Assembly: GCA_051530055.1 (NCBI GenBank) | Contig: CM121341.1 | Coordinates: 6,798,784-6,862,783 of the forward strand | DNA length: 64,000 nt | DNA from: Neoechinorhynchus agilis | Lineage: Eukaryota > Animalia > Acanthocephala | Reading direction: 5' to 3' | In this document: positions 3,339 to 64,000 of the stretch, piece after piece | Position numbering within the stretch: the stretch's first letter is position 1 | How the letters are laid out: every line of letters begins with the position of its first letter | Position numbers and translations under genes: made by a program | The notes under the pieces: model-generated | Seen by the model: only the letters and a program-made list of their open reading frames with translations | Told to the model about the DNA's origin: nothing | Databases searched by the model: none

Positions 3339-3897
3339 ATAACGAATTCGCTCAACACTACTGTTCATAAGTACAATATCGTTTCTTTAAGATGAAAAAT
3401 CAGCATCTTCCCCTATACATATCAGGAATTGTTGAACCCGGGTTCAAACGGGGAAGTCGAGAACTTGGATTTCCAACTGGTATGGAACTTTTTGTTTATG
3501 TGAAGCAAACTTAAGCGTGTGAATGAATCACACACTTAAACGTGAAGTTCCAACGAACCCAGTACTGCAAATCACCATAAAGCGGATTTTATTAAACTTC
3601 ATTTTTCCTTTTTATTTCCGCTAAGATAATATATACGAATTTTAAGGCACTTTTAGGCTCTTAGAACGTTCTATTCCTAGAAGATAAAAATGATTATTTG
3701 ACAATTCTTAAACTCTGTTCAGCCAATTTAGACGATGAATGTGTCCAGGGACTACCGGATAGTTTCGAGGACGGAGTCTATTACGGTTACGCTCGCGTTG
3801 AACGCATAACGAATTCGCTCAACACTACTGTTCATAAGTACAATATCGTTTCTTTAAGATGAAAAATCAGCATCTTCCCCTATACATATCAGGAATT
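3339..3897 (+). pseudogene. RFK: Riboflavin kinase 5' fragment (exon 1, intron, part of exon 2), circularly permuted, with a terminal 92-bp direct repeat
   Basis: ATG at 3392: MKNQHLPLYISGIVEPGFKRGSRELGFPT, phase-1 intron, then ANLDDECVQGLPDSFEDGVYYGYARVE...VHKYNIVSLR, stop at 3860-3862. Matches the RFK motifs GFGRGSKQLGIPTAN and GIYYGWA. 3339-3430 is identical to 3806-3897. No convincing C-terminal exons found. Confidence 0.8.
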
Positions 3898-4748
3898 CTT
3901 GTTGTGTGGGTTTAACCCCGAGAAATATTCTCATTACTTCATATTTCGTGGGCAAAATCCACCTCTTCAGACATCCACAATATTGGTTTATACGGATTAC
4001 CTTAGACTCAGAAGCGCGCCTCATACACGAGTCTTCGCCTCAAGTTAAATTTCATATTCTTTGTTAGTTCTTAAGACTTGATAAAACCAAGGATTCATGG
4101 CAAAATGTTTTCTCATATCTAACCATTCATTTAGACCGATCTTGGAGCGTGGATACGATTGACTGAGTAAACATCCCTGTACAAGATACAATTCGTTAAA
4201 GTTGCGCATAGATCCTTATCGTAAAAAATTTAACCAAGGGAATTTTTTCGAATATTCAGTAATTGCTCATTGGTCAATTCTCAAGTTTTGAAATACAAAT
4301 GTATACGCAATGTTCCGACTTATCATCGAAAATGCTTATAAGAAAGCTCGTTTTCGCATGCTTTTACTTCCTTACAGAATTTTCGAAATAAAATCCTTAT
4401 AGTGTTGCGATTTCGCCAATAGCCATTTCCTCAAAACCATTCTTCAATTTTACGTTTCGTTTAAATAATTTTCTCAAGGATGGGCGTATTTAAGCGATCA
4501 ATTTGTAAAGCCCGTCGACATTATTTTTGTTATGATTTAAGAATTTGTTTTCGCAAGCGATCAGCATGAAAATTGCCATTAGTGTAGAAAAAGGATGTAT
4601 TCATTGAATCACCACAGATAAGCAATTCGAAGAAAAGCGTTTTAGTTAAACGTACCGGCCAATTAAAGTTTCCTTGACAATAAAATGCGACAAAGTCGTT
4701 TACAACTTTTAGAAAAAAGTATTTTTAAAAAACATCTCATATGCGCAT

Positions 4749-7700: not shown

Positions 7701-8224
7701 AGGACAATTGAACGGCATTTGCGTTCTTTTTAGCGATCTAAAAACACAAATGTGTGTGAAAATCGAGCCAAAAAATTGACCTGAACGATCATTTTCGTTC
7801 GTATGCGGTCGTTGAATTGATGAATGATATTGGCGTTCATGTTTCCATTAGCGTCCATATCGCCAATCATCACAGGAAAGATCTCATTTGCACTGTATTG
7901 ATTTGATCCAACATACGATGCACCCCATTTGAACGCATTGAGTCCTCCCATCGATAAACTGTGGTTCACTTGAAAGTGTGAACTAAGCGACTTGGACGCT
8001 GAAAACCGAGCTCCCTCGAAGCAATTTGGTGTCAGTTCTAAACGGATTGTTTATCATTCGCTGGAGCGAGCAAAAAAACCTTTGAATTTTCGGAACAGAT
8101 CCTCAAACGATCCTGGATTGCGACTAAAATCGCCACATGGTTTTTGAATGCCATGCGGAATCATCGGATACGGCGGCAAACGGTCATCGGACGACGCAAC
8201 CGAACCAGATTCTTCAGAACTCAT
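4749..8224 (-). CDS. TOMM40: Mitochondrial import channel TOM40, multi-exon
   Basis: Exons give NPGSFEDLFRKFK, ELTPNCFEG...HFQVNHS, FPVMIGDMDANGNMNANIIHQ, GIFIGQYLRRIT, QFGVELEAS...LSYQVD...FKG, and last exon 4888-4749 AFTDSNWNVGGVMEKRFSQLPFSLIISG...FKFGFGMNVG*. GT-AG introns. Confidence 0.95.
5090..6060. repeat. Tandem ~210-235-bp satellite (~4 units) in the last TOM40 intron; same family as ~43050-44620 (reverse) and ~55810-56680
   Basis: Recurrent gagaaaatcttttgagatgatagagtttaagatg and ccacatttccaacaaaccattaatcatcgag. Confidence 0.9.
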
Positions 8225-9255
8225 CTCGAATAAATAATCTGTGTTGTATTGAAGACGACACAATTTTATTAGGATTCTTACGTATTTAATTTTGAAATTG
8301 AGTACGTAATTTGGTCTGTTTTTATTTACTTTTTTATGTACGCGAAGGCCGAAAATTATCAAAAATAAGCCTCAATTGTTTGATAATTCGCTATGAACAC
8401 GGAGGTTTTTTTTAAAAAATCAAGAGGGTTTCAAAATATCTCAATGATTTTGAGTCTAGAGGGTAATTATCATTTTAAGGGTTTTTTATTCGGATTCGAC
8501 CAAAAAACCATTCAGAGCTGCCCTTTGATCGTATTTCGGATCATAAATCTTTGGGACGCATCGGCAATAAATTAGTCAATTTAAAAAAGGACGTATTGGA
8601 GTTGCGAGCTCTCATGTCTTCTGACAATTTGGTCATATTAATTAAACGGTTTTTGTAGAACATCCCTTATTCGGATTTTTCCTTTAGGCGCTCATGCAAT
8701 CGATATCTTGGATCAGAGAAGTGATTGAATCATTACGATTGCGAGCTTGTACATTTCTTCGGATCCTCAGATACCTCCTGTGGGGGGGAGACGATTTTAA
8801 TCAGTGATTTTATCGTTTTCTCATGTCTTCTGACAATTTGGTTATATTAATTAAACGGTTTTTGTAGAACATCCCTTATTCGGCTGATTTGTTGGGCGGA
8901 AGTGATTAAATCGCTTAAATCCCAATAAATCATACGGTTGCGAGTTTTGAACGCATCTGTCCGTATTCTCAGATGTTGGTTTTGAATCCTTTGACCCACT
9001 TAAGCACTAATTTTAGTTCTTCCTCTCGAAATATCACTATAAAATATTTTTTATCAAGCTTCATTATGATCACTGCAACTCCAACTTTATCATCCTGAAC
9101 GATTTTCTCTTGCAAAGGGATTATTTTGTATTCTTACAAAATTGATCTTCAATCGATTGTATTTGCATCAGTCGTCGATGAACGACAAAACGCGAAATCA
9201 AACTCGGATTTTTCCTTCAACAATTTTTTTAGATATTTGTCGATTTTGATCTTAG

Positions 9256-11099
9256 ATGGATCACAAACCAGGAAAAAAGCGATTTCTTGATTCAGTTTCT
9301 AAGGATCTTCGTGAGAATCGAGTAAAACCTCCAGAAAAGAAGCGCCGTCACACAGTTGGTCCCATTCGCCGGGCCAAAAATGTACACCACTCATATACTC
9401 GACTGGACGACTTCACTTCGAGTTCCAAAGAATTTCTTTGCTCGAACGCTGGCGTTTTGTTCACTGCTGTCATTAGCCCACGGCCATCGGCGACGAGACT
9501 TAAACGAAAAGCGAATTTCGCCGATAACAAAGGGTGTTATTTTGACGAATGCGATTTTGATGATTGTAAGACTGTAAAGACGTTCTTTGACAAATACTGC
9601 GATTCACCTTGCGTGTGGCGTACAGTGGATGAACTTAACGAGTTGGTGGAAAAATTAGATTTGGAACCTGTAGTGGAGAAAAATGGGACTGATCCAAGTG
9701 CACTAAAACCCAATGCTTCAACTGTGTCCAATGAATTTGATAAATTAGAGAAGCTTCTTCAAAACTTCGCGGATAGCGCTTCTCTTTGTGATCAAAAGGA
9801 AAACTTACCAGAAACTGAAATCGAATTACAGACGAATGACGAGTCGCTCAGTGCGCTAACGGATAATAGGAAACGGACTAGTATTGATCAAATGATCATC
9901 AATGATGTCGAAATAGAGAAAAAGGTACGAATAAAAGATTTGGACAGTGCGGAGAATGAACGATTAGAGTCCAAGTCGAGGTATTCCGTTGATACGGACG
10001 CCATAAGGAAGAAGTACGAACTTAAAGCACCCAGTATCTCGGCGCCAAAATATGGAGACAAACTCATAGAACTGTTACAAACGAATTCAAAGAGTTCAAT
10101 TCACGATGAGCTTGATAATGAAAAGTTTAAACATCTGAGATTCATGCAAGTTTACGTGGTAGATGTTAAGGTTGGGTTTTCATAGATTACTTTGAGAGAG
10201 CACAACATGAATCTCAGTAATCAGATTTTAAAAGAACTTGAAATAATTATGGTAAAGTTGAATGGTATTAAGCTCATAGATATACCGAATGACTCCTTTC
10301 AAATCTGTAAGCGGGAACTTCCATTTTACGAACAAACGATCGAGAGCATCAAAATACGCGAGCGAGCGTCGTTAATGGCCAAAAAATTATTTTCACCTTG
10401 GAAATTGACATCGATTGGTTCTTTAGGAAAATTTACAATTTCCTCAGACAATTCTATTGCTTCACTGAACATTGAAACACGTAACAAAGTGGGAACGGAC
10501 TACTTGGATACAAACTTCGAGATTCTGTCTTGCTCAATCGAATTTAACTTAAATGAATTTGATACGTACACTAAGAACGCGTTCAATACTTTCATAGATA
10601 AATCAGGAATTTATGATGTTTTATCCGAACCTCAAGTTAGCGTGAAAGATGTTCAACGTGTTATATTAGAAGTTGACAACGCTTTTCGAAATACCAAGAT
10701 GTTCGTTTCATCGGTCTACGAAAGTTGCAATAAGACAAAATTTGTAAGAATTCTAGAAGATGAACACTGGATCGATATTCTTTTTCGAATAGATAATTAC
10801 TCGTTTGTTTCGGTTCAGTTTGCACTGTCTTCAAGGAAAGATAAAGTGTTTGATTCGGGCATCGTCAAGATCATCGATCTTACTTTAAGGTGAATTCCTT
10901 TGTCGTTTGCGCCTTCTTGTTGTTAAATGCACACCATTCACTATTTAGGTACAATTGGGTTAATGGACTAAAAAAGAAATTAATCGATCTGATCGATGAA
11001 GAAATAAACCGAATTGACGAGTTAGTTTCTATTGATCAAATTGTTTTGCGTGTTGGATCGATCTTGAAGGCCAACGTTAGTGGTACTGGTGATCTTTAA
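9256..11099 (+). CDS. ~590-aa, 3-exon protein with a coiled coil and a C-terminal region resembling the KNL1/Spc105 tandem RWD domain (tentative)
   Basis: ORFs 9256-10185, 10192-10893 and 10890-11099 join through short GT-AG introns. PWKLTSIG..FTISSDNSIASLNI, VQRVILEVDNAFRNTKMF and IDILF..FVSVQFALS loosely parallel the KNL1 C-terminus. The CDS is well supported; the family call is weak. Confidence 0.55.
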
Positions 11100-11189
11100 T
11101 AAAATCTAGTTCGTTCTTACAATTTACTTATTTCGTTACAAATGCACGGGAAATAATATTTAAGTGATTGGAGAATTATTGTTTAGAAG

Positions 11190-13320: not shown

Positions 13321-16300
13321 ATGTATGACAACCGTCAAGATTTACAACAGTTGGATAACAATCTACAAACCTCAATGATTGGATCACAAGTCTCTTGCCG
13401 AAAATTCAACAGGAAGAAGTTTATCTCAGATGCTCTAAGAGAGCCATATAATTTAGAGATCGTGAAGTATCTGTCTCAGGTAATTTCTTAAAATCGTAAG
13501 TGTATCCATCACGTTATTGCTGTTGTAATTTATTCTTTCCACTATTCTTTGGACTCGATTTTAAGCCAATACATTGGTATTGTACTATATTAAATAGAAA
13601 CTTACTTGTTGCTATAAAGAGATTATTTAAACTATATCAAAAATTTGACTATTTCGTTCATTTTGGTCTTCGTCACCACCCCAAGAATTAAACATTAATT
13701 ATTGAATTAAATATTTCGGAACCTGTGTTGTCTGTTCAGTAAATTATTTTTTGAAGAGGGAACCCGGGTTGCGAAATATTTAATTCAATAATTAATGATT
13801 AATTCTCGGGGTGGTGACAGCTCACAGAAAACCAAAATTAGATTCCTCCGAATGTAATTCTCAAAGATATTTCGTTTATGATCGCCTAATATGAGTCTTG
13901 TCTTTTATGGGTTCTTTATACACTTGATTGTTGCCAATTTTCAGACACGATTTAGTTTTTTCTTGTGACCTCTCAATAAGTTCAATTCCTCATTAAACTT
14001 CTCTTTCAAAGATGGATGAGATCATTGGAGATGTGGACTGTCATGAACTGCGTCTGCTGAGATTACGTTTGCTAAAAAAAATTAGATTTCTGGAAAATAG
14101 CGAAAATCAAGGAATTTGTGCATACAGTCATGTAAGTATTTGTTGCTTGGAATTTTGCTCTCCCAATATTAATAAATTTCAAGGCAATCAAGCAGTTAGA
14201 GATGAAAAACTGGATTGTTAAAAGGCGAGAGGATTGGAATAATCTTTTTCGCAAGTTTAGGGAAATCCCACTACTTCGTAAAATCGAATCTCAGAAAGCG
14301 GAAGTGACCTGTGTGGATGACATTATCGATAACGTAAATGAAGCAATGCAGGAAATGTCAATTTATGTTAGAACTGCAAAGGAAATATATAAAAACAATT
14401 GCCAAGTGTGAGCATTTATCTGCTTTCTGCCTTGATCGCTGGATCGGCACTGGAATACACCTAAAAATAAACTGTCGCCATCTCTTAGATTTAAACATTT
14501 CAAGTATAGACCACCAGCAGGAACGGAATTTATTGTCGAGCATGAATGTTTGATTCCAGTTCCATCTTATAATCCAAGTTGGCAATCCTTGTTACATATA
14601 AAGATTGTACCTAAGCCTCGCGATGACACGATTGAAAAATATCTTGTAAGTTCATTTTATGGCAGGGAAATTTATTCCTGCTGAAATCCTTAGACCCAAA
14701 GAATGGGCAATTCAGAATTGTTTAAATCAATTTGTGATTCAATGACTGTTCTGTATGACTTTAAAGACCGAATATGGACATTGGCCCAATCAAAGAATCC
14801 GTTTAAAGTTAAGATCTTTTTGTCTATCTCGCTCCTATTAACTTACAACGAAAATAGATGCACAAAAAATCTACCAAGAGTACTTTAGAAAGATCTGTAC
14901 ATCGATTGAAACTCTTAAAGCTAAACCACCATAAAGGGTATACTATTTTGCTACATGATGGGCTTAAAAATTAATTCTAAAATGATCGTTCTTGAGCCAA
15001 GATACCACTTCGAGTCCATTTGAAGAATTTAGGCCTTTAATCCCTGCATTGTTCAACCGAGGGTTATATTTAAATTCGCATAAAACTAATATTTTGGGAT
15101 GTACAAAAGATAAACGCGACTTCATCCGTAGGATAAAAACATAGATTACAATTGATGATTTCGCAATTTAAAATTATAGTGCGTGCAATCGAATTTCAAA
15201 GTCAAATTAATGTTCTAAAGATTTTTTTTCGAGTAACCCAAAAAATGGAAGCGAAAACTATGAATTGGTAGAAATGCAATATGTAGAAATTAAGTTTTTA
15301 AGCTGTATTCAATAGATTAATTTACTTATTAATCTACTTTTCATGTTAGCTTTTCTACGAGATTAAAAAATTTAAACGGCCTTGCTTATATTAACAGGTT
15401 CAATGTTTGTTTTGATTTCAAGAACTATCACAAGCGTAAGAAATCCAATGTTCGTCAAGTTACACCTGCCCGTTATGTCATACGAGGAGATTGGTTCGCT
15501 AAGCAATTGTCTACGGATATTTTCAAAGAAAGTCCATTACCACCTACTCCCGAGCCTTTAAAAAAAGTCAAGGACATGACTATAGATGAACAGACATCAA
15601 TTAAGGAAGATATTATTCATCACTTGCACGATTGCTCATTTGCTAATCTGATGGGAATTTTCGAAGGATTGCATAATTCGATTCCTATCAACTCCCAATT
15701 GCTCGATTTTGACTTATATCAGCCTGAATTCAGTATACTTTTGGAAAATTTGTTCGCTTACAACGAAGAGATTTTTGAGATCTCTAATATCATCTGGCAA
15801 ACAAACAAACAAATGGCTTCAGAAATCAGGTAGTTGATTTCAAACATTTTTCTTGCTAGTAAAACGGGTTTCACCATCACGGCACAATCAAAATCCATCT
15901 TCCTGCAGCATTTCCCTAATTAATATGAAAGGCATTTGTCAATTAAATTCCATTCACCTATAAATTTAAGCGATACACTTTTGTGTCTCTAAACTAAAAT
16001 GATAAATTGTTTTTTCAATAAGAGATGAATTCATGTACATTAACCTATAAAATTTCAATGCAGTAACCAATCAGATTCGTCCTTATTGGTTTCTAAACTT
16101 TGCAAAGACTGAGATTACGAATTTGTTCGTTTATATGCAACGTTCGTCGAATATTACCTTAATCAATGTTTTATTCGAGATTTTTATCCAACGAAAAATG
16201 GGTGTTTTTTATTTCTTAATACTCCAATTTTTCGACGTCTTGCGTCTTCGTCAGGGAGCTTCCCTTCAGTGATCTGACGCAAGGCGTCGAAGATTTGGAG

Positions 16301-32732: not shown

Positions 32733-33332
32733 CTAAAAATAAAAGATATTTCGTTTTCTAGATCAATCAATTATGTAGCTGAATTAGAAAATGCAATTAT
32801 TTTTTGTTTATTAAAAAAATCATTGGAAATTGTGCGGTAAAGCATAGAGCGCAACACCGGAATTTGAGTAAAAAAATCCGACAGCATTTTCCCCATCTAA
32901 TCTAGAAAAAAGTTTAGGGCTGATTCGAACTTCACAATCAATAGTGATTTGTTTCCATACATATATATTTCAACAGTTATCGTACCTCATTGAGACATTG
33001 AAAGGAGTATCTTGTAATAATGAACTATATTGCCACGGGAGTGCATGAGTGTTTGTTTACCATCTCGACATATGATCAGAAGATCGAAATTCTTTAAAAT
33101 GGGTTGCTGGGCTTCTTTTTTTTGTTATAAACACAGAGAGAACTGCTATTTAAAAGTACAATGTGCCTTACTCAACAAAAGTCAAACACAAATGAGATGT
33201 GAGATAAAAAGGACCAATATTGTTCAAAGCGATACGTGCGATTTTCAGCGAGAACATTTCGTTTCTCAAAATCCGTACCTGACCTATTGTTTATCATTGA
33301 TTCGCTTCACCAAAAACAAACGACTAGTCCAT

Positions 33333-34692: not shown

Positions 34693-35519
34693 CTCAGAGT
34701 GAACAAAAACAACAATCATATCCGCCAGTTACTTAGGTTCTTCCGTGTTTTTTAAACTTTGAACACTACACTTGTAAACAACCTATGAAAGAAAACAACC
34801 TATTTATGTTTTTTATTTGTCGATAGGAGAAAATAAATGAAATTAAAATTTTATTGGATATTTCGGTCCACTATCTAGGATCTTCTTCAACAATTATAAA
34901 TTGATGGACAGATCTAGTCTATTAGATTAATTTACGATCGCTGAAGAAGATCCGAGATAGTGGATCGAAATATTCAATAAAATCTTAATTTCATTTTCTC
35001 CTATCAACAAATAACAATGAATTATCTTTTCAGCAAACCTATTTATGAACAGTGTTCAATCTTCTGATTCATTGTTGTCGGTGTTTTCATAAGCGACCTA
35101 AATGAAGCAAATTATCAAACAATTGATTTATTTGATAATTTTCACTCTTCGCGTAGTCTATCCAAAATGCAATCAAGAAACACTCAATTTGGTTTATCCC
35201 ATGGGATCCTCAGATTGAGTGTGTAATCCGCTTTGTTGCTCACAAATCAATTATTCGATAATTCGCTATATAAAGTGTTTTTGTAGAATATCCTTTAGTC
35301 GGCGTTTTCCCTTTTAGGCACACATCCAATCGATATTTTGGATTTTAAATGGTATATGTTAATTTTTTACTGGCAAAAGCGAACTCAGATCTATCATAGG
35401 AGCAATTTTTAGGCTGAAGGTCAATCAATCGTTAATCTCTCATAACGTTTTTTTATTGATGTGAATTATTTTAGCACTTTCGGTGGTCGAATTTTATGTT
35501 TTACATCAGAGAAGTCCTT

Positions 35520-35680: not shown

Positions 35681-36447
35681 CAACTACGAAATGAACATTT
35701 ATGAAATGAATTGTCTTTTTTTTTCTAAAAGATTGAAAAATTTCAATAAATTAGGATTTTTTTAAGGATTCCATTAATATAGAAAAACATAATCGTGTTT
35801 GTGAGATTTTAAATCGAGAATGGAAAAGCGATTACTCAAGAAACACTCAATTTCGTTTATCCGGTGGTATCCTTCAGATTGAGTGATTAATCCGCCTTGT
35901 AAGACCGAATTTTAAAATATTCGAGTTAACGAAAAGGCCGAGTATTTTCAAGATGAATTTATTTCTGAATCAAACATCGCTAATTGAAACTGCTCAGAAT
36001 CACATCTTAGTCAATTATTTGAGAGTTTTCGCTATAAGAAAAGTCAAAATGATGAACATCTTTACAAATTCATTGCACACAAGTGAAAAATTTAGCATCC
36101 CGATATGGATTTTCTCTCGATAAATGCTTTAATTTTACGATGCGTAAAATAAGGTTTTATTATCTTTTAATGCAATGGAAAATCAAGACATAGCGATCAT
36201 TTCCATAGTTTGAATCTCAGCTTTCTGCACCAACAGAGAACAAGCCACAATTTGCGGTCATTCCAGGCAATTCATTATTCCGTGATTTTCGTTAGAATGC
36301 TAAAAAAAGCCGACGATAACTTGAATTCGAAATTTTGAGATAAAAAATTAATTTTTATCCCACAGGTTTAGCGACGCTGTCGTCAAACCGAGAAAGAACA
36401 CAAATACATTTGGAATTTGGGATTTTTACACGTGATTTTATTGACGA

Positions 36448-39400
36448 ATGTCGGAATCTTTGCCTGTGTTGAAGGATAATCGTCGGGACGATCTAATTCT
36501 AGCGTTAGTCAACAACACACTCGAATGTATGATATGTTGTTGTTGTATAAGGTTGTTAACATTTTCTCTTCTTAAAATTCTAAACTCTCAACGATAAGGT
36601 CTGAAGTGGCCGTGTTCAGCTGTCGAAGTTGCTTTAATGTGTTTCATTTGTATTGTGCTAAGAAATGGTCAAGGACTCTGAGTAGCGATAGCCACCGGAT
36701 CACCTTATGGCGATGTCCTGCTTGTCAAGTCGAATCCGACACTCATCTTCCAATTCAATATCGGTGTTTTTGTGGTAAGTTTATCAACCCCCCCCACCGT
36801 TTCAATTATGGTTCAATGACTTAAAAAATTAACGCTCAATCAATGAACTTTACGCTTTTTTTCGCAACCACACACACAAAGACCATTTGATACTGTTCGA
36901 ATCAAAGCATCTGATCTTAAACCTTGATTGCTCCAGAAATGGCATCAAATTCCTCCCGAATGAAAGTGTGAACACTTTCCCCGTGAGATTGATGGTAAGA
37001 AAGTCAAACGAAGGTTTTTGTTTCGTAGTCGTTTGCCCGGTACAGGGTTCGATTCCCCCCCACAAAGACCATTTGATAAAGCATCTGATCTTAAACTTTG
37101 ATTGCTCCAGAAATCTTTCCCCGTGAGATTGACGGTGAGAAAGTAAAACGAAGGTTTTTTGTTCCGTAGTCGTATGCCCGGTCCAGGGTTCGATTCCCCA
37201 CTCCCCCCACACACCCAATATTTCACGTCGTCTAATAATTCCGACATTTTCCCCGAGGTTTGTAAGTTTTTTGTGTGGCAAAAATACTAAAAGAAAGTTT
37301 CTTTTCCTCCACGGATAAGAACCCGAGACTTTTAGTTATTTTAAGATCGTTTCCGCCCATCGTAACCAATTTTTTAAATCAAGATTTTGTGTCTTTTGCA
37401 TCAATAACTTCTTAAGTGACAATTAAAGTTCTATTCAATTCGTTTTAATCGGCCATTATTACTGGTCTTGGTTCAATCTTGCGTTTCCCAAACCAGAATT
37501 CACATTATAGGCAAAAGAAGAGATCCTCCGGCTACTCCGAGCTACTCCACACCTCACAGTTGCGGCGATATATGCGGACGGGAACGAGTGTCAATTTCCA
37601 CTGGACAAACATGCGACCACTTATGTACGGAACTGTGCCACCCTGGACCATGTCCTCAATGTGTTTTTCTTATCAAGATCTCATGTCATTGTCTTAAGGA
37701 ATCAAGAAATCAGCAATGCGGTATAGCCTTAAAGTGGTCTTGTGGTAAGATATGTGGAAAACGTTGTCAACTAGGAGTTCATTCTTGCTCTGTTGTATGC
37801 CATTCGGATCCATGTCCGCCTTGCGAACACATATTTACGTCTACTTGTCATTCACACGGAATAAAGAGAGAAATCAAATGTAGTGATCTCGACCAATTAG
37901 CTCAGTGGTTCCCAAAAAGTTTTTTTCTTTTAATGCTATAAAACAATTTTGTTCAAGTATTTATCAACATTTTTTTGTTAGACTGAGTATATTTCAGCGG
38001 TATTTCGTCCTCTTTGACTGTGAACTATCGGTGCCAATAGATTTTGTAACCTTTTGACCTTGAAACAAAGATTCGGGCCACGAAATTCAAAAGATTTTAA
38101 ACGTGGGTAAAACGTTGGATCAAAACTGTGACCTCAATGCTCGTATCCTTCATTTTCTCCGTTTTTTACATACTTCCATTAACATAACAAGTTTGAAAAC
38201 CCGAATGCCTTGACGTTGTTCATTGAGGCTCAAATTGATTTTAATTTCTTCCCTAGCTTTGGGAACCACTGATTTAGCCCCTGATGACTCTTATTCTTGT
38301 GGTGCGATATGCGAAAAAAGGCTGGAATGTGAAGGTGGACACTCATGTATGAGACTTTGTCATTATGGAAACTGCGGCCCATGTCCGCTCTTGCCTTCAT
38401 TGGTCACTCATTGTCCGTGTGGGAAGAGTCTCATTGAGAACAAACGATCAAAGTGTACGGATCCAATCGAATCCTGCGGAAAACCTTGCATGAAAGCAGT
38501 CGAAGGTTGTGGGCATCCATGCGTCCTAAAGTGCCACACAGGTGATTGTTTGTGTATTTTTAAGCGATTCTCAGCGTTTGAAGACGCATTAGTTTTCTAC
38601 ATACGTTTTTGCGTTGCCCGGAGAAGTTTTAAAAGTTGTTTTTTACTTGTGTGTGGTGAATATGCTCTTATTTTATTTATCTTAAATCGCATACAATCAG
38701 GGCCTCACGGCATGTCTTTGGGGGCCTCTCGGCTAACTCACAGACTTCGGAGGCGCTCCATCGCACTCGAAGGGTTGTTTCTGGGGCCTATGGGCGATCC
38801 CAAACCTGACCCCACCCTTCCAGCAGCCTCGCAACCCCCATGGAACCCAGCGACCAATCGAGCGCATTTTGAATGCGCAATACTCGGCCATTGGGCCCCT
38901 AATATACTCGCCCTAATAAAAAAATCATTTTATTTTTCGCGAAATATTTCGAAAAAGGGGAAACCTATAAGGCGAGGTTTCCTCTCTTTCGAAATATTTC
39001 GCGAACAATAAAATGATTAAGTATCAATGTGTGGCCTTTTTCCACGGCTAATAATTTTCCTTTTGGTACACAGCCCACCGATCCCTTGCATCCGAGAAGT
39101 GATTGAATCACTTAGACTCTGATGCATACGGTAAAGAATTTGTACATTCCCGAGGAGACAAAACTCATCAGTGAGTTTCCTCCTCCCTTCAACGAGATAT
39201 TTCGTTCCCTTTGATTATGGGTCATCGGTGGTAACGGATTCGAACCAGTTGACTCTTAACTGGGATCAAGGGCTTAGGGCGATTCACCACATACAGACAA
39301 TTGAAAAATTTATCATCCCTGTGTGGATTTTCTCTGGTTATGATTTTTGTACACACTTCTTCGGATCCTCAGATACCTTTCCGGGGATAAGACGATGATA

Positions 39401-42017: not shown

Positions 42018-42445
42018 TCAATAGCCCAGTTTGACGAAATAGTCACGAAGACTACCAAGATTATTGGCAACAAGTTCTGATTTGACGGTATCATCATGAG
42101 TGGCAATCAAAATACCTAAATTGGAAAAATAGAACGAAAAAAAGGATTGAGTTTTCGAGAACACGTACATGAGTTGGCTTTAAACGCAACCAGTCCAGCG
42201 GCTCCTAGTTTTAGAACGCAGAATTCACCACAAGTCCTAACAGCGATGTATCGGCCATCGCCGACTGTGATTCCATCAGAAATCTTTTCAAAATCACTCG
42301 TTCCTTGAATCAGTAACTGAACTTGGGAACTATCCATCTTAAAGTTTGAACTCTCACACCACGGATTGCCGTCCAGACCATAGATCCCAGCTTGATTTAC
42401 GCCTTGAATCTCCTTTATTTTGTCGATGTACGCTTGCCAACTCAT
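42018..42445 (-). CDS. Profilin, 2 exons (53-nt intron 42168-42116)
   Basis: MSWQAYIDKIKEIQGVNQAGIYGLDGNPW...GITVGDGRYIAVR...CILIATHDDTVKSELVANNLGSLRDYFVKLGY*. Confidence 0.95.
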
Positions 42446-43049
42446 CTTGAAGAAAACAGCAGAATTCGGAGAAGAGACGTCGGTTTCATGGAGTGGCGAG
42501 ATGGGAAAGAATCAAATGGACGAGACTGGGCTTTGACGTCTGAGAAATGTGACGAAAACGATTTGGCAGCAAGTTTTCGGGTTTTGAAAGCGAATATTCG
42601 ACGATTTCATTCAAGTGAAATATCATGAGCCTGTTTTTTTTCGTCCTCTTGAAAAACAGAGATCAGTGTTTAAAAACAAGTATGCCGAAAATATTTGTTT
42701 TTCGAACAACAATGTTCAATCTCTCGTTTCTTCAGAGTGAAAACGAAATCCATAGAAATTTTCCCGATCAAAAAAACCCGTCAAAATCCTTCATATTGAC
42801 AGTTGTGCTGCACGATGATTTGTTCGCAAAGTCACCGAATATTCGTTCTTATAATGAGCGATGCACATCTTTTGGTGCTGTATCAAGTTAATGTTTGTTT
42901 CTAAGTGAGGAAATGCATCCCGGGTATTTCTGTAATTCCGCCGTCTCAAGATGCGTCTTGTGTGCTAAATGATATTTACGGAACTGACTTGTAGAGCTGA
43001 GGTGCCTGCTTTGTGTAAGGTATTGCGAATGAGTGTCATACGCGATAGT

Positions 43050-48000: not shown

Positions 48001-49183
48001 GATTCTTCACTGTACCATTTACTATTAGTGAAAAATAGTTCTTTTAAAATGCTCCTTTTACCAATGACAACTGTCGGAGATTCTTTAATTGTTTTCAGAC
48101 TGCATGTCCCCTCGCGAGAACAGTTAGGCGAGGGGATTACAACAGGAGCAGTCAGTTTATCCAGGTTAAAGAGTAGCTGCTGACCACTCGAAGGAATCAA
48201 AAAGTTGAAACCTTTCAGTAAAATGATAAATTCCTTCTTTTTATCACTTTTATCATTTTTAAGGCAACTCTTGATCCATTCGTTCCCATAATTGTTTTCG
48301 TTGATGAAAGTCTAAACACAAAAGTTGTTAGAGAACGCTCATTTAAGCGAAGCAGCTTGTCGTTTGAATATTTCTCGGTAAAACAATCACGGATCGTAAA
48401 GGAAAATTCGATTCCCAAATTTTTGTTTAACCTTTAAGTTTCCCCATTGAACATTGCACACAACAGAATCGTCCAACTAATCAGGTGTTTTTACGTTATT
48501 TTAATCGAACTAATTGGTTTTTGTAAAGAATTTGTTCACGGATATATGTATTTTTTGTGATGAGAACAGATTGATTTGTCGATATGTGAGGAGGTACTGG
48601 GGAATGTGATTGGAAATATTGATTAGAAGCCTTCATCACTCGGTAAATGATTTTTTCGATTAAAGACGTTATGTGAACCTCGTTTTATGGTAATCATCAG
48701 TTTGTTAGTTAGCGTTGATCGAGGTTCGAAACGTCTTTAATCGAAAAAATCATTTACCGAGTGATGAAGGCTTCTAAACAATAATTACAGAGATTGATTT
48801 ATTATCGTCAATATTTCGTTCGTCTCATCGGACGTCTTCAGGTTATTTGCTAGTGTTCACGGCTTCAGATCGAGTGAAGTCCGACGAGACGGACGAAATA
48901 TTGGGAATTGATGTGTTTCTCTTAGGTCAAAATACCTCGAGTGGTCTATAGTAGAAATGCAAGTGAAATTGGAGACAAACCTTAGCATCATAACCATTCA
49001 TTGCTAAAGTAGATTCCAATCTTCGTTGGTTATCAAACTCTGTTTGATTTGCGCATATTAAAACGCTGATTGACTGCGTAGCTAAAAACTCGATTTCTTA
49101 ACAAAAGAGCATATAAAAGAGAGAGAGTAAATACCTGCAATTATTGCGTAAAAAACCAATATCGATCCAATCAAATAGCTCAT
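45065..49183 (-). CDS. PLOD paralog A: intact Fe(II)/2OG lysyl hydroxylase domain, degenerate N-terminal glycosyltransferase domain
   Basis: Signal peptide [17 protein letters not shown]; [19 protein letters not shown]; [20 protein letters not shown]; [16 protein letters not shown]...[12 protein letters not shown]...[10 protein letters not shown]. At least one middle exon (~47600) not resolved. Confidence 0.9.
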
Positions 49184-49252
49184 CTAGAAATAGACGGTCA
49201 CTTATTTTACCGGAGCTCAATGAATAATTATTTTTATTTCACAATGGAATCA

Positions 49253-52200
49253 TTAGGGATCAATGAATGACACTAAAATGTACCGCGTTCCTTCGGTAAT
49301 TTTTAGACCTTCATGGATGTGGGTAAGTCTACCCGGAAACATGACCGGCCATCCAATTCTTGTGTCCACCAATGAACAATTATATCGAATAAATTTAACA
49401 CCACCAGCCTTATAATCAATACCGGCTCGATTTAGAGCAATATCCAGGGTATATGTAGAAGCGTCGTGGTGTGCTCTGAGATGATCTTGAATAGAAAGAT
49501 CGTACCTAACCACAAATGTCAAAGGAGCTTGTGGTGGATCTTTATAATATCCTAAAAATATCCTCATCTGCAAGGGCTGAATAAATTGTTTAAGAAAATG
49601 GTGCCAATGATCCTGCCATCCGATTTGCGTCATGTGGATATCGTCAGTCGGTACGTTCTCATATCCTCCTGGAATGCGACCGTCTGTGTGTTTTCCCAGT
49701 GACCATTGCCCAGTGTTGTTGACGGTCTCGATCATCTCCCTTGCAAATCTTTCCGATAATAGGGGATACCAAAACACATCTGAGCAAGGCTGAATCTTGA
49801 AATTGAAGAAAAATGACTTAAAATCTATTGACCCTACCTGTTGAATAAAGAACTTATCGGTCTCAATCTCCACACCAACCAAATCGCTCAAATATTCTCG
49901 TCTCCACTGCTCCAAAGGAATCTCTTTTTGTTTCGTATACTCTAAGAATTTTGGATGTAAATATCGTACTTTCCAATCTTCGAGATTACTAAAAATTTCA
50001 TAAAGTTCAGGGTGAAGCGCTGTTGAGTTGAAACTTTCAGGATCGACCAAATGACCGTAACTGTGGAGATTAGTCGCCCACATGAAAATTCCAGAATCTC
50101 GCAAATATTTTGTAAGTTCCATGTCTTCATCGATTTCCTTCTCTTTCCACCCACCTGCCTTTTCAAGGCGGTCAACGATTGCTCGTTTTAAAAGAATAAA
50201 CGATGAAATATGTGGAACATTCCACATACCCACTCGTTCATCTTCAACGATCGATACATAATCGCTTGATCGCAAATAATATCCGTTTTCGTCAATCGCT
50301 CCCCAAAAGTTTGAGAATAGTCGACTGGGTCTTCGCAGTATAGGAGCAATCACCGATCGATTAAGTCCTATGAGGAAGGCAAGCGTCTCAGGTTCATCAA
50401 TGTGGGCAGTAGCGTCCATTATAAGAAGATAGTCACAGTTCATACGTCGACATGATTTGATAAAATGGTTCCTGGCGTCCTTTTGGTTCAATTTCTTGTC
50501 TCCATGATGTTCATATAGTCGATAGGATTTTTTTAGTTTACCAGCTTCGAAAAAATGTTTGATTTGTTTGTCATGAATTGGAGCACTATTATGAATTACG
50601 AGACCAATTTTGGATTGTGGGTAAGAAATGCTAGTCAGTTTTGTAAGAAATTCTTCAAAGAAGGGCGTTTCGGATTCAGCGAGGACGCCAATTAAGACCG
50701 ATGGCCATTTGTTTCGCTATGATAGGAACACATAATTTCAATGAAGATTAAAGTGTCCTACTCACGTTCACAGCTTCCAAGTCAAATACATTATTTTCGC
50801 AGTGACGGCAACCGAAATTAGGAATCCAGCGTTTTGCCAAATAATTGGAAAATTGGTTGAACAGTAGCTGCACAGGTAAAGCGAAAATAAAGATGGAGAG
50901 AGGTTAAGTTTTGGTTAAAAACTTTTACAAACTAGCGGAGCCATCGATGTGAATTTGAGACGAAAATGATAAAAACGAAAATAAGGGGGAAACTTGAACC
51001 GATTATTTTGAAATGGTGAATGAGGAAAAGTTTAAGATAGTTTGAACCAGAGAAGTGTTGAATGATTAATAATTGGAAAGGATGAATGGAGAAAAATGGA
51101 TATAAAAAGATTAGAAGTTCGAAAGGAGGGGAAGGAGGGAAAGTTTAAGATAGCTTGAACCAGAGAAGCGTTGAATGATTAATAATTGGAAAGGATGAAT
51201 AGAGAAAAATGGATATAAAAAGGTTAGAAGTTCGAAAGGAGGGGAAGGAGGGGAAGTTTAAGATAGTTTGAACCAGAGAAGTGTTGAATGATTAATAATT
51301 GGAAAGGATGAATAGAGAAAAATGGATATAAAAAGGTTAGAATTTCGAAAGGAGGGGAAGGAGGGAAAGTTTAAAGGAAATAAAAACAAAAAAAGGAGAC
51401 AATGAAAATGATAAGAGAATGGGAAGTTGTGGAATGAGAGGAGGATAAGAAAGCGAGTGTAGTAAGCGCATCGAAAAGGAGGAATAGAGAAAATTTGTAA
51501 AGTGAAAATGATCCTAAAGAAGGAAACTAGAATCGGAATGAGCGTATTGTGGAGCACGAAACGGGTTAAAGGATCAAAATGAGAATAGTGAACATTGTTC
51601 ATGGGAGAAGATGATCGAAATTGCAGCAGCAGAAAGGTCGTCCGGTCTTTTAGTTTTGACGGGTAGAAGGTTGGTAAAGAGCAATACAATAAACAATTGG
51701 ACGAAGAGAATTTTTGTACAAATATTTAAATTAAAAAATTATAAGACTGTACAGAATTATGCCGAACCTACCTTAGAAGGGCCATTTCCATGCAAAATGG
51801 ACGGACGAGTTCCAGATTGGAAATTGGTAAGAATTGAGGTAGCGTTTTCAAACGTGATCTGCAAATCTTTTTGAGCTCCATTCAGGCTTTGAAAGATCTC
51901 AGACTTTGTATCGAGTCCAACGTCCTTCTGTCCCTTACGTTTCGCCGCATTAAGATAGAAATTTGTATACGCCAACTGATCATCATCAGCGTCCTTAATC
52001 GACAATGAGTTTATTAAATTTATAACATCATCTTTATAGCCCATGAAAAGGCCAGAGTTTAGGAACCGACTTGCGTTCTCGGAAACTTCTGGATATTTTG
52101 CCTAAATAGAATAGAGTTACGACAATTTCAAACGAGAATCTTTATATTACTTCGAGCGTTTTGTCTGGCCAGCAGAATGTTTCTGCGGAAAAGATAATGC

Positions 52201-53231
52201 GTTTGTCGAATGTGACGAATTTTCTAACAATTTCATCGGGTTCATCGTTGAATATCACATCGTATCTGAGGAACTGTTTAACAAAAAAAACTCTATTTGT
52301 TCTGATAAACATACCCGTCAGTGTAGAGAACGAGAGTCTCATTCACGGATTTAATCTCATTTAAATGCCGTTTGAGAATGTTTATTTTCTGACCACCTCC
52401 AACGCTCGTTTTGACATCACCTCCTTTCCATTTTTCATTCAAACCAAAAACCTATTTTAGACAACAAAAAATTTAAAGTCTCTCACAATACTTTATATTT
52501 TTTTGGCGGAAAAAAATGAACTAAATCCGATTGTTTTCGGAGACACAATATTGTGTCAAAATGTCGATATTTGAGGAAAAAGTTATTGTTTAGTTAAGTC
52601 TTCATCAAGCGGTAAATAATTTTTTGCACTAAAGACGTTCTGTGAAACTTTACGAACTTGTTTTTCGAGCATTTCAATTGATTGAAAACCGCTTTTATTA
52701 CCGTCTAAAGCTTGTTTTCAAAAAAATCAAAAAGGAACCATTCAATCGGCGTAAACTCGGAAATAAATATTAATTTTTAATATTTAAAAGCATACAAGAA
52801 AACTGGTGATGAATAGGACACAAGGTTCGCAGAACGTCTTTAGTGCAAAAAAGTATTTACCTAGTGATGAAGACTTCCCTAAACAATAATAAGATTGTAA
52901 ATTAGAATCAAGTCGATTGGGATACGCCTTGCCGAAAACAATAGGATTTAATGAAAATTCCTTCAATTTTTCCGCCATATAAAAAAATGAACAATGTTCA
53001 AAAACCCAATACCTTATAGTCGTAATCATAGAAGTCAAGACTCTCTCTAAGCAATTCGAACCCGTCCGTTTCATCTGTCGCAACAGTGAAAACAAGAAGG
53101 TCTTTGCCGTCTGAACATGTTCAATTAATATTTTCTTAGTACAAAATAACTTAGCACTTACTTAAAATCCCGTTTACGAGCGAACAACAGGCGAACAGTA
53201 GCACAACAACAACATTGGTTGTCAAGTTCAT
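49253..53231 (-). CDS. PLOD paralog B: canonical multifunctional lysyl hydroxylase/glycosyltransferase (LH3-like)
   Basis: LLVFTVATDETDG, WKGGDVKTSVGGGQKINIL, YTDGYDVIF, FSAETFCWPD, RFLNSGLFMG, DADDDQLAY, ILHGNGPSK, RAHHDASTY, PGRLTHIHEG, RYILVSFIDP*. Confidence 0.95.
51028..51372. repeat. Three ~113-bp purine-rich tandem units in a PLOD-B intron
   Basis: aagtttaagatagtttgaaccagagaagtgttgaatgattaataattggaaaggatgaat...gaaaggaggggaaggaggg, three times. Confidence 0.95.
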
Positions 53232-53617
53232 TTAAAAAGAAGACGGCAGTGTACGGTTTCTAAAACGCAAAAATCCGGACGTAAAAGCGATATTCCTTCA
53301 GAACAAGTTTCTGTGTATCTACATCGCAGTATCCTCCCATCTTCCTTCGTTATAGACAAGAGACGCTATATTCCCCCTCCCGTAGACGCCAGAGAATAAG
53401 TCGTAGAATAGAAGAGACATTAAGACCACGGAACACTACTCGATTCAGCATAATTTTTACAATGTATGCGCACTGCTTATGCTGAGAATTTGCTAGCTGG
53501 GCCAACCAAAAGCAAGGCTGTATTGGCGCAAAAAATCAACATAATTTTTTCTTTTGGCTGCCTGGATGCATGTCGAACCTTGGGTTTTGTGAAAATAAAC
53601 ACATTGAAACAAACATA

Positions 53618-62200: not shown

Positions 62201-62956
62201 GACTGCATGGGACCTATTTTTGTTTTTAATTGGACATTAAGAACAAATTTTAAAACACTGACTTTCTGTAATCCACTCTCTGTTAAGGTCATAATATCGT
62301 CCACCTGATGAAAGCAGCAATATCGATGAACCCCAGTCTTCGCTAAGATATTGATTATTGGATCTGAAGCTCTTATAAGCTTAGGACTTATGTCAACTGA
62401 AAGTGTTCTGTTGAACTTTCGCACTTCTTGATCCGTCCATGCGTTAAATTTCGATTTCACAGTGCATTAAAAGACTTCGAACTGAGAACTCGCAATTTTC
62501 CCTCTTTCAGTAAACTAAGCAACTCGTCCAAGGTGTCGCCTTTTACCTAGTGATTTGTTCTTTTTATCGAAAACTTGTATCATTACTTACAAATTTCAAA
62601 GATCGATTGACAAATTGACATTGTGAAGATATTATATGTGAAACTTTATTTGTTGGACTAATCGATTTTGCCCATTGAACAAGTTCGTCCAAGCAAAATG
62701 TCGATGATTCACTTCCGTATGTTTTGTCACTTCCGAAATGTCTTTTGTCCAAATAAATGCTTTAAGCACGAACTTACCAATCCACATGGAGAATCCTTTT
62801 GCCTGACTTAGACAAATAAGCAGAAATTATACTTTCAGGAAGTCCTAAAGATTATTGCGTAGAGCGGTCCATGGAGGAAACTTTAAAATTCTACATGCCT
62901 GTACCAATGACAACGCAATCAAATTCCTGTTGAATCAGATCTGAACTCTCGGTCAT
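59245..62956 (-). CDS. CHM: Rab escort protein (Rab GGTase component A, CHM/REP)
   Basis: [104 protein letters not shown]. C-terminal exons (~59770-59245) are tentative. Confidence 0.88.
59939..60973. mobile_element. ~1-kb foldback element with composite ~220-250-bp inverted arms, in a probable CHM intron
   Basis: Both arms begin acttttggtgaaaataatccccatg and end ttttctctatacggc.ag...cctcgagattt...catgcaaattttc (right arm reverse-complemented). Confidence 0.75.
62845..62898 (-). other. GC-AG intron (54 nt) in CHM/REP
   Basis: ggtacag|gcatgt...ctttag|gacttcct restores the conserved GTGLPES; the nearby GT gives a frameshift. Confidence 0.85.
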
Positions 62957-64000
62957 CTATAATAAGTTCTAATCAAAATGAAACCGTTGATAATTGCGAT
63001 TTTTATGCAATTGTAAACATTTTCTTGAAGAACCGACATTTTGTATTGTTTATTGAGACAATTTTTAAAGTTAAAGTATAGATAACTAAGTTCTAATCAA
63101 AATGAAAACTATGCAATTGTAAACATTTTCTTGTAGGACCGACATTTTGTATTGTTTATTGAGACAAAATTTGTAAAAGTTCTGATGGGAACGAAGGAAC
63201 ATCTTTATTTTCTTTTATTAGTTTTGCCATCCCGAATTTAAATTCACTAATTTATTTCCTCGATATTCCACGTCGGATAAACAATGACAAACCTTGACGA
63301 AATGTCGGAATTATCTGAGAAATGAAATATCGAGGAAATAAATTAGCGAATTTAAATTTCCGGGGTGGCAAAACTAAGAAAAAGAAACTATCTTTTCCCC
63401 GAAGATAATAATCCAGAACATCTTTATTTTCCTTTGTTTGTTGTTGTTGTTGTTGCGACTAACCATTTTCCAATTAAAACTCTACTCAATGGTGGGAGAG
63501 GTTTGAAAATTTAGAGCGAGACGGGTCGGGGCATTTGTAATTCTCCCTTTTTTCGACGGTGTCCTTTTCAGCACTTCACCGGCCCATAAAACTGCAAAGG
63601 ACAAGAATCGATTTGAAAATGGATATTTACGCCTGAAATTTCACGGCAGACTAAAAATCGGTACAATAAAATCGTCCAGTGTGATTAGACGAAATATTTC
63701 AATTAAAGTCAGTCTCATTTTCAATTGGTAGAAGTGATTTTTTTAGCTAATAATCCTAATTAATAATTCAAATAAAATGTAGTTTTGCGCTATCAAGATC
63801 TAAAAGCAAGATAGTGATAATTTAATTATAAAAAAATTATTTAAATTTAATTCTACCCGTGGCATTAATCACGACCCATCTCGAACGCCCCAATCGAAAT
63901 TGCGTCGGTAATTTTCAAACTAAACTTCAAAATAACGACTAAGGAAATTCTTAAAATTCTAATAAAGGAGGGGCGAAGGATATAAAATATCCCTTGGAAC

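What the first reader, a model, noticed from the sequence alone, without database searches (positions are those of the whole stretch)
3382..62958. Splice acceptor fused to the start codon (AG|ATG) in most genes: likely spliced-leader trans-splicing
Seen in sequence: a pyrimidine-rich acceptor ends exactly at the ATG in RFK (tttctttaag|ATG, 3392), TOM40 (tttattcgag|, 8224), ADCK1 (ttatttttag|, 32732), METTL14 (ttcactctgag|, 34692), profilin (ttttcttcaag|, 42445), PLOD-A (ctatttctag|, 49183) and CHM (ttattatag|, 62956). The unanchored gene at 9256 also shows it (gatcttag|). PLOD-B, NFX1 and the convertase-like gene do not. That is far more than chance AG frequency would give. Established: SL trans-splicing acceptors often lie at or near the ATG in nematodes and other trans-splicing animals. 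Inference: these mRNAs receive a common leader directly on the start codon, so the leader would supply the entire 5' UTR and initiation context.
Basis: partly seen in the sequence, partly recalled or inferred. Interest (0 to 1): 0.82.

Follow-up and report, generated by a model that had tools for sequence, protein, structure and literature searches.

The report
Splice acceptors fused to start codons
In this piece of the genome of the thorny-headed worm Neoechinorhynchus agilis, most genes carry a splice-acceptor signal that ends exactly at the start codon, which is what you would expect if a shared leader RNA is trans-spliced onto the mRNAs; this process is known in related bdelloid rotifers, has not been reported for acanthocephalans, and is not proven here.

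Summary
All eight AG|ATG junctions are at the stated coordinates, and I found a ninth at 14012. Only 7.3% of the window's ATGs follow AG, yet 7 of 9 genes whose N-terminus is fixed independently of the AG do (P = 3.5e-7). A separate gene caller picks the same ATGs.

The AGs look like real 3' splice sites. A pyrimidine tract sits only at -12..-3 (T 60%, Y 77%) and matches confirmed cis acceptors in the window. Every site also has an AG-free zone of at least 12 nt upstream.

PLOD-A's ATG lies 69 nt after PLOD-B's stop codon, with an AATAAA in between, which resembles an operon. In Pomphorhynchus laevis, the METTL14 and PLOD orthologues have strong acceptors 2 nt before the ATG.

Spliced-leader trans-splicing is the best explanation (about 0.65), but it is inferred. 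The window holds no SL RNA gene, and no transcripts of this species could be reached. The rivals are cis 5'-UTR introns and near-leaderless transcription.

SL trans-splicing is known in bdelloid rotifers. I found no open paper reporting it in acanthocephalans. This would be a new member of a known kind, and the public RNA-seq data (PRJNA1223661) can test it.

The parts
3370..3394 (+). RFK: pyrimidine tract, AG (3390-3391) and ATG (3392-3394)
   Evidence: Sequence. Residues 7-58 match Flavokinase profile positions 4-51. The site lies inside a 96-nt direct repeat, 3339-3434 and 3806-3901.
8222..8246 (-). TOM40: tttattcgAG|ATG (A of the ATG at 8224)
   Evidence: Porin_3 profile 1-127 matches residues 36-162. 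The collection's gene caller starts its 325-aa Porin_3 gene at 8224.
9234..9258 (+). Gene 9256 (no known domain): gatcttAG|ATG
   Evidence: The 309-aa ORF is on record as a called gene. It has no Pfam match, so the start is not anchored by homology.
13990..14014 (+).
   Evidence: Found in my scan. The collection's gene caller starts a 179-aa gene exactly here. It has no Pfam match.
32730..32754 (-). ADCK1: ttatttttAG|ATG (A of the ATG at 32732)
   Evidence: The gene caller starts its ABC1-domain gene at 32732. The N-terminal resemblance to ADCK1 rests on my recalled human sequence.
34690..34714 (-). METTL14: a long pyrimidine tract, then cactctgAG|ATG (A of the ATG at 34692); an in-frame upstream ATG lies 27 nt before it
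   Evidence: The N-terminus aligns with homologues P0002 and P0026. The gene caller's 146-aa first exon starts here. Upstream ATG.
42443..42467 (-). Profilin: ttttcttcaAG|ATG (A of the ATG at 42445)
   Evidence: Pfam Profilin profile 1-127 matches residues 1-124. The gene caller's 124-aa profilin starts at 42445.
49181..49255 (-). PLOD-B stop codon TAA (49255-49253), AATAAA (49238-49233), then ctatttctAG|ATG of PLOD-A (A at 49183): a 69-nt operon-like spacer
   Evidence: PLOD-A exons 1 and 2 parallel PLOD-B exons 1 and 2. PLOD homology by tblastn.
62954..62978 (-). CHM/REP: ttattatAG|ATG (A of the ATG at 62956)
   Evidence: Residues 9-66 match GDI profile positions 2-54.
53229..53275 (-). PLOD-B start (ATG at 53231, signal peptide MNLTTNVVVVLLFACCSL...) with an acceptor-like ttttgcgttttAG that ends 28 nt before the ATG
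   Evidence: GT_PLOD profile 3-148 matches residues 27-172.
36350..36450 (+). NFX1 start (ATG at 36448) with an acceptor-like tttttatcccacAG that ends 83 nt before the ATG, and no ATG in between
   Evidence: The gene caller starts the gene at 36448.

Best explanation
These are outron 3' splice sites used for spliced-leader trans-splicing in the acanthocephalan Neoechinorhynchus agilis.

Proposed mechanism. Primary transcripts start upstream, or continue from the gene before, as for PLOD-B into PLOD-A. The spliceosome recognises a short pyrimidine tract plus the first downstream AG, which in most genes lies directly against the AUG. It then joins a capped leader exon from a small Sm-class SL RNA, encoded elsewhere in the genome, to that point. 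The mature mRNA would be leader followed directly by AUG, so the leader provides the cap, the whole 5' UTR and the bases at -1 to -3. Upstream ATGs in the outron would be discarded.

Shown: the acceptors are real in sequence terms, they sit on true start codons, and the pattern is far beyond chance.

Inferred: that the partner is a trans-acting leader rather than a gene-specific upstream exon, and that PLOD-B and PLOD-A form an operon.
For: - Seven of nine independently anchored starts are AG|ATG against a 7.3% background (P = 3.5e-7). An independent gene caller picks the same ATGs.
- The 20 nt before the AG are 49% T and 65% pyrimidine. Confirmed cis acceptors in the window give 44% and 63%. 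The other 147 AGATG sites give 31% and 47% (Mann-Whitney P = 3e-5).
- The enrichment is confined to -12..-3 (T 60%, Y 77%). Position -6 is T in 9 of 9 sites, and -5, -9 and -10 are pyrimidines in 9 of 9.
- The previous AG lies 14-82 nt upstream at all nine sites.
- PLOD-A's ATG is 69 nt after PLOD-B's stop codon, with an AATAAA 49 nt before the ATG. That leaves no room for a promoter, an exon and an intron of the 42-55 nt seen here.
- The two genes without AG|ATG have strong acceptor-like sites ending 28 and 83 nt upstream of their ATGs.
- P. laevis orthologues read aatttgcag|AT-ATG (METTL14) and ttttcttatcatag|TA-ATG (PLOD).
- The organism is N. agilis: the contig is 19,375,080 bp, equal to the 'Largest contig 19,375,080' in the supplement of PMC12690905. 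NJ trees of METTL14 and PLOD place the window's proteins next to P. laevis.
- Bdelloid rotifers trans-splice a 23-nt leader onto more than 50% of their mRNAs (PMC1925144; PMC3795323).
Against: - No leader sequence or SL RNA gene was seen. Rfam at gathering and at permissive thresholds found none, and the bdelloid leader is absent from the window and the fetched loci.
- No transcript of the species is in the protein collection, so cis and trans cannot be told apart directly.
- The base at -3 is a purine in 5 of 9 start-adjacent sites, including two GAG, against about 2 of 15 cis acceptors (Fisher P = 0.06). These are somewhat unusual acceptors.
- The monogonont rotifer Brachionus plicatilis showed no leader in ESTs (PMC1925144), so the trait varies within the clade.
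- Neither N. agilis genome-related paper mentions trans-splicing.
- PLOD-A's first exon is anchored only by exon structure shared with its paralogue, not by a significant alignment.
- The sample is one 64-kb window of about 13 genes.
Confidence: 0.65

Rival explanations
1. Ordinary cis-splicing. Each gene has a short non-coding first exon upstream, and the 5'-UTR intron happens to end at the start codon.
For: The sites are indistinguishable in composition from cis acceptors in the window. Introns here are tiny (42-55 nt), so a nearby upstream exon could easily go unnoticed. No SL RNA gene was found.
Against: No known force would place cis 5'-UTR acceptors exactly on the ATG in 7 of 9 genes. 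PLOD-A has only 69 nt between the upstream stop codon and its acceptor. The best GT in that spacer would give an intron of about 27 nt, well below the 42-nt minimum seen here. The same near-ATG acceptors occur in P. laevis, whose introns are long (its PLOD spans 35.7 kb).
Confidence: 0.15
2. Near-leaderless mRNAs. Transcription starts within or next to the pyrimidine tract (a TCT- or TOP-like initiator), so 5' UTRs are only a few bases long, and the AG is part of an initiator or initiation context.
For: The genome is a very compact parasite genome of 46 Mb. Pararotatorians are reported to lack several eIF3 subunits (PMC12256650). The conserved signal lies within 12 nt of the ATG.
Against: An initiator needs a pyrimidine-purine step at -1/+1. 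The base before the A of the AG is a pyrimidine in only 4 of 9 sites. T at -3 in 4 of 9 sites is the poorest Kozak base. The two non-AG|ATG genes and the P. laevis orthologues show the YnAG motif at varying distances (2, 26, 28 and 83 nt), which fits an acceptor rather than a fixed initiation context. Leaderless translation is not known in animals (my own knowledge).
Confidence: 0.08
3. Chance, or bias in choosing start codons: the ATGs were picked because an AG precedes them, or they are internal exon starts.
For: Gene 9256 and the 14012 gene have no homology anchor. An ab initio gene caller may have learned the AG context. RFK looks degenerate downstream.
Against: Pfam profiles begin at or within a few residues of the chosen Met for profilin, RFK and CHM, and after a signal peptide for PLOD-B. 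Seven of nine anchored starts give P = 3.5e-7. Internal fragment starts from the same gene caller are AG-preceded in 0 of 5 cases.
Confidence: 0.02

Closest known systems
Spliced-leader trans-splicing in bdelloid rotifers (Adineta ricciae, Philodina; Pouchkina-Stantcheva & Tunnacliffe 2005, as cited in PMC1925144 and PMC3795323)
   Same: Same clade (Syndermata; acanthocephalans are placed with bdelloids in Hemirotifera, PMC12256650). A leader is added to more than half of the mRNAs. The leader ends in ...GAG, which would put a purine at -3 when joined directly to AUG (my inference).
   Different: No leader or SL RNA has been seen here. The bdelloid 23-mer is absent from the window. Whether bdelloid acceptors abut the AUG this often was not documented in the papers I could read. 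Operons have not been reported in rotifers (PMC7986045), whereas PLOD-B/PLOD-A looks like one.
Nematode SL1 trans-splicing of outrons and SL2 operons (C. elegans)
   Same: A pyrimidine tract plus AG acceptor lies close to the AUG (consensus TTNCAG, PMC5580712). The native 5' UTR and its upstream ATGs are removed. Downstream genes in operons are trans-spliced a short distance after the upstream polyadenylation signal.
   Different: It is an unrelated phylum. The acceptors here are mostly TAG, AAG or GAG, never CAG. The candidate spacer (AATAAA to acceptor, about 45 nt) is shorter than the roughly 100 nt usual in C. elegans (my own knowledge). How often C. elegans genes have zero spacing was not verified here.
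Tunicate SL trans-splicing with very compact operons (Oikopleura dioica, Ciona)
   Same: A compact genome, very short introns, a single leader serving both first and downstream cistrons, and minimal intercistronic spacers (my own knowledge).
   Different: It is a different phylum, and none of these features has been tested here apart from the spacer length.
Flatworm spliced leaders ending in AUG
   Same: The leader-mRNA junction coincides with translation initiation (PMC3795323, PMC9851317).
   Different: In flatworms the leader can donate the AUG. Here the AUG is encoded by the gene, directly after the acceptor.

Membership tests
Spliced-leader trans-splicing system | The same non-genomic leader sequence at the 5' end of mRNAs from many genes | not testable with these tools
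   No transcript-derived protein of this species is in the collection.
Spliced-leader trans-splicing system | An SL RNA gene: a leader exon, a GT donor and an Sm-binding site flanked by stem-loops, usually in many copies | tested here: inconclusive
   The 64-kb window gives no Rfam hit and lacks the bdelloid leader. A 169-nt tandem repeat (53617-54427) carries the Sm-like motifs GATTTTTGG and ATTTGTGG, but its folding is no better than shuffled sequence (z between -0.7 and +0.9). The gene may lie anywhere in the other 46 Mb.
Spliced-leader trans-splicing system | 3' splice-site signals (pyrimidine tract, AG, AG-free zone) upstream of the coding region of many genes | tested here: met
   The composition equals that of cis acceptors, the enrichment is local to -12..-3, and the previous AG is at least 14 nt away in 9 of 9 sites.
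Spliced-leader trans-splicing system | Operons: same-strand genes with a short spacer holding the upstream poly(A) signal and the downstream acceptor | tested here: inconclusive
   One candidate pair, PLOD-B to PLOD-A: a 69-nt spacer with an AATAAA. There is no RNA evidence, and PLOD-A exon 1 is anchored only by paralogous exon structure.
Cis-spliced 5'-UTR intron | A gene-specific upstream non-coding exon with a GT donor at a workable intron distance | tested here: inconclusive
   This cannot be judged without RNA for most genes. For PLOD-A the 69-nt spacer cannot hold an exon plus an intron of at least 42 nt.
Kozak-type initiation context | A purine at -3 as the dominant conserved position | tested here: not met
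   At -3 the counts are T 4, A 3, G 2, C 0. The conserved positions are instead -1, -2, -5, -6, -9 and -10.
Initiator / TCT core promoter overlapping the start | A pyrimidine-purine step at -1/+1 of the transcription start | tested here: not met
   If the A of the AG were +1, the preceding base is a pyrimidine in only 4 of 9 sites. A start elsewhere in the tract is not excluded.

The most novel reading that the evidence does not exclude
Acanthocephalans trans-splice a spliced leader onto most mRNAs, with the acceptor fused to the AUG in about two thirds of genes. The leader would then be the entire 5' UTR. At least some neighbouring genes, such as PLOD-B and PLOD-A, would be processed from polycistronic precursors. 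That would be the first SL trans-splicing reported for Acanthocephala and the first operons in the rotifer-acanthocephalan clade, and it would date the leader to the common ancestor shared with bdelloids.
Probability: 0.45. Interest if true: 0.6.

Novelty: new member of a known kind. Interest (0 to 1): 0.5.

Why it matters
SL trans-splicing is scattered across animals, and whether it arose often or was lost often is still debated.

Within the rotifer-acanthocephalan clade it has been shown in bdelloids and was not found in a monogonont (PMC1925144). Evidence from an acanthocephalan would show whether the leader dates to the common ancestor of bdelloids, Seison and acanthocephalans.

It also matters in practice. 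Gene models for N. agilis and P. laevis could use the YnAG|ATG signal to place start codons. Mapping of transcription starts would have to allow for outrons. Operons would change how co-expression is read in these fish parasites.

A leader that supplies the complete 5' UTR of most mRNAs, in a lineage reported to have lost several eIF3 subunits (PMC12256650), would be a useful case for studying translation initiation.

Tried and rejected
That search was wasted.
- A spliced TOM40 N-terminal query found only distant vertebrate TOM40B. It gave no relatives and no transcripts.
- Accession searches in the paper library (GCA_051530055, CM121341) found nothing. The organism was identified instead through gene trees and the exact contig length in a supplement.
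- Literature searches for AGAUG or AGATG together with 'spliced leader' were unproductive. The C. elegans papers I read did not give the trans-splice-site-to-AUG distance.
- Look-ups meant to extend the window failed for the ORFs at 671-1450 and 55249-55833. As a result I have no independent gene calls for 45-64 kb and no flanking sequence.
- P0142, a neighbour in the PLOD tree, turned out to be an intron-poor metagenome eukaryote or virus and was uninformative.
- My greedy exon-chaining script produced wrong gene models and was dropped. Exhaustive pairing of short introns was too noisy. The cis acceptors I used were curated by hand from homology-guided junctions.
- A scan relating AG|ATG to ORF length did not discriminate.
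- The AG|ATG at 43880 lies inside a roughly 200-nt satellite and was rejected as a gene start.
- The 169-nt repeat as an SL RNA gene: one reading puts an out-of-frame AUG inside the leader, the other relies on a weaker Sm site, and neither folds better than shuffled sequence. I did not adopt it.
Full report
**1. The observation**

There are two on the + strand (3392, 9256) and six on the - strand (A of the ATG at 8224, 32732, 34692, 42445, 49183, 62956). Across the window, 156 of 2133 ATGs (7.3%) follow an AG.

The main risk was circular choice of start codons, so I anchored the starts independently.
- Pfam places profile position 1 of Profilin on residue 1.
- Flavokinase positions 4-51 fall on RFK residues 7-58.
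- GDI positions 2-54 fall on CHM residues 9-66.
- Porin_3 positions 1-127 fall on TOM40 residues 36-162.
- GT_PLOD positions 3-148 fall on PLOD-B residues 27-172, after a signal peptide (all).
- METTL14's first residues align with the N-termini of homologues.
- ADCK1's N-terminus resembles the human protein as I recall it, which is a weaker anchor.
- PLOD-A's first two exons mirror those of PLOD-B. Each has a signal-peptide exon ending in phase 1, then an exon of 101 versus 98 nt ending ...K|gt. BLASTP and Pfam do not detect the similarity.

Seven of these nine anchored genes are AG|ATG (P = 3.5e-7).

The gene caller behind the sequence collection independently starts profilin, METTL14, ADCK1, NFX1, TOM40 and gene 9256 at the same ATGs. 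It adds a gene at 14012 that is also AG|ATG. Its five internal fragment starts are never AG-preceded.

**2. Are these AGs splice acceptors?**

I curated cis introns from homology-guided junctions in TOM40, profilin, PLOD-B and ADCK1. They are very short, mostly 42-55 nt, and mostly end in TAG or CAG, sometimes AAG.

- The 20 nt before the start-adjacent AGs are 49% T and 65% pyrimidine. That cannot be told apart from the cis acceptors (44% and 63%). It differs clearly from the other 147 AGATG sites (31% and 47%; P = 3e-5).
- The enrichment is confined to -12..-3 (T 60%, Y 77%) and is gone by about -40. Position -6 is T in 9 of 9 sites, and -5, -9 and -10 are pyrimidines in 9 of 9.
- The next AG upstream is 14-82 nt away in all nine sites.
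- T is the commonest base at -3, so this is not a Kozak context. The base before the A is a pyrimidine in only 4 of 9 sites, so it is a poor initiator.
- One oddity: 5 of 9 sites have a purine at -3, including two GAG, against about 2 of 15 cis sites (P = 0.06).
- The two genes without AG|ATG have strong acceptor-like motifs that end 28 nt (PLOD-B) and 83 nt (NFX1) before the ATG.

**3. Which organism?**

METTL14 has no relative above 57% identity in the collection, and its genomic ORF sits on NCBI contig CM121341.1 of assembly GCA_051530055.1, which is 19,375,080 bp long.

Neighbour-joining trees of METTL14 and PLOD both put the window's protein next to Pomphorhynchus laevis, an acanthocephalan. 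PLOD identity is 55% to P. laevis against 49% or less to all others.

The supplement of the Neoechinorhynchus agilis genome and transcriptome paper gives 'Largest contig 19,375,080', total length 46.2 Mb and GC 38.8% (PMC12690905). The window is therefore from N. agilis.

That paper, and a companion paper on gene loss in the clade, never mention spliced leaders. Only two open papers contain both 'acanthocephala' and 'spliced leader' or 'trans-splic', and neither reports the process in acanthocephalans.

**4. Cis or trans?**

There is no direct evidence.
- Rfam finds no SL RNA in the window at either threshold.
- The bdelloid leader is absent.
- No transcript-derived protein of the species is in the collection. 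Its RNA-seq was deposited in 2025.

Three indirect arguments favour trans-splicing.
- PLOD-A's ATG lies 69 nt after PLOD-B's TAA, with an AATAAA 14 nt after the stop codon and 49 nt before the ATG. A promoter, a non-coding exon and an intron of at least 42 nt cannot fit there. Resolution of a polycistronic precursor can.
- In P. laevis, whose introns are long (its PLOD spans 35.7 kb), METTL14 reads aatttgcag|AT-ATG and PLOD reads ttttcttatcatag|TA-ATG. THOC7 has an acceptor-like site 26 nt upstream. A YnAG that hugs the ATG at slightly varying distances fits an acceptor, not an initiation context.
- Bdelloid rotifers, close relatives, trans-splice a 23-nt leader onto more than half of their mRNAs (PMC1925144; PMC3795323). 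A monogonont showed none, so the trait varies within the clade.

**5. Mechanism proposed (inferred)**

The outron is removed at the first AG after the pyrimidine tract, and a capped leader is joined directly to the AUG. The leader then supplies the full 5' UTR. Upstream ATGs are discarded. They occur within 150 nt in 8 of 9 genes, including an in-frame one 27 nt before the METTL14 ATG. A leader ending in RAG, as the bdelloid one does, would also give a purine at -3.

**6. Verdict**

That the sites are acceptors is well supported. SL trans-splicing is the best explanation at about 0.65, followed by cis 5'-UTR introns (0.15), near-leaderless transcription (0.08) and chance or bias (0.02).

This is a new member of a known kind. 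The process is known in the sister rotifer lineage and unreported in acanthocephalans. Public RNA-seq can test it directly.

Noticed in passing
window 3339-3434 and 3806-3901 (+); RFK locus 3392-4100: A 96-nt direct repeat (99% identical) copies the RFK acceptor, ATG and first 43 coding bases to a site 467 nt downstream, just after exon 2. Only RFK residues 7-58 match Flavokinase. The downstream part reads in three shifting frames, and the collection's gene caller does not call RFK. It is probably a decaying copy or a local misassembly.
   Followed up: partly
window 53617-54427 (+), just upstream of PLOD-B: A tandem array of 4.8 copies of a 169-nt unit (94-95% identical). Each unit has the Sm-site-like motifs GATTTTTGG and ATTTGTGG and a hairpin AAAAGGG-N8-CCCTTTT followed by a T run. 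I considered it as an SL RNA gene array, but folding is no better than shuffled sequence and no clean leader and donor emerges.
   Followed up: partly
window 45068-53231 (-): Two PLOD (procollagen lysyl hydroxylase) genes lie in tandem. PLOD-B is complete. PLOD-A keeps the C-terminal domains, but Pfam and tblastn cannot detect its N-terminal glycosyltransferase domain. PLOD-B intron 5 (904 nt) holds a 113-nt minisatellite at 51018-51374.
   Followed up: partly
window 10183-10185 (+): The 309-aa ORF of gene 9256 and the following 235-aa ORF are in the same frame, separated by a single TAG. The gene caller splits them into two genes (the second starts at 10207). This could be one gene with a read-through, a sequencing error or an unrecognised intron.
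   Followed up: no
window 5028-5920; 27757-28579; 43250-44338; 55862-56688: Several different satellite-like tandem repeats (units of about 92-230 nt) fill the intergenic space. Some share peptide-like motifs across loci.
   Followed up: no
window 43649-43797, 34839-34991, 38914-39025, 13674-13816, 57893-58033: Long perfect hairpins (like miniature inverted-repeat elements) match plant microRNA models on both strands, well below the gathering scores. One sits 150-300 nt upstream of the METTL14 start.
   Followed up: no
window 11187-11400, 22364-26958, 57246-57701: Remnants of transposable elements. They share a ...RPDG..VFPW..G..L.WD... motif in three places and give a weak ALOG-domain hit. 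A 545-aa gene called at 26784-24325 has no known domain.
   Followed up: no
window 16786-21456 (+): A 1557-codon open frame rich in S, E, Q and N has internal 216-nt repeats (18025-18552) and no Pfam match. The gene caller models a 1677-aa product starting at 16449 with a 5-nt first exon, which looks artificial.
   Followed up: no
window 58245-58321 (+): A single tRNA-Met (CAT) gene lies among repeats and transposon remnants.
   Followed up: no
window 33333-33340 (-); 32805-32815 (-): The METTL14 stop codon is embedded in an AATAAA (gAATAAAtgg). Another AATAAA lies about 75 nt before the ADCK1 acceptor, and a 41-codon AG|ATG ORF (32896) sits between the two genes. A METTL14-ADCK1 operon is possible but untested. 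AATAAA occurs 1.4 times per kb per strand.
   Followed up: partly
L006 (P. laevis PLOD locus) compared with window 49256-53231: Genome architecture differs sharply within Acanthocephala. PLOD spans 35.7 kb in P. laevis but about 4 kb here, where most introns are 42-55 nt. METTL14 has no introns in P. laevis and one intron here.
   Followed up: no
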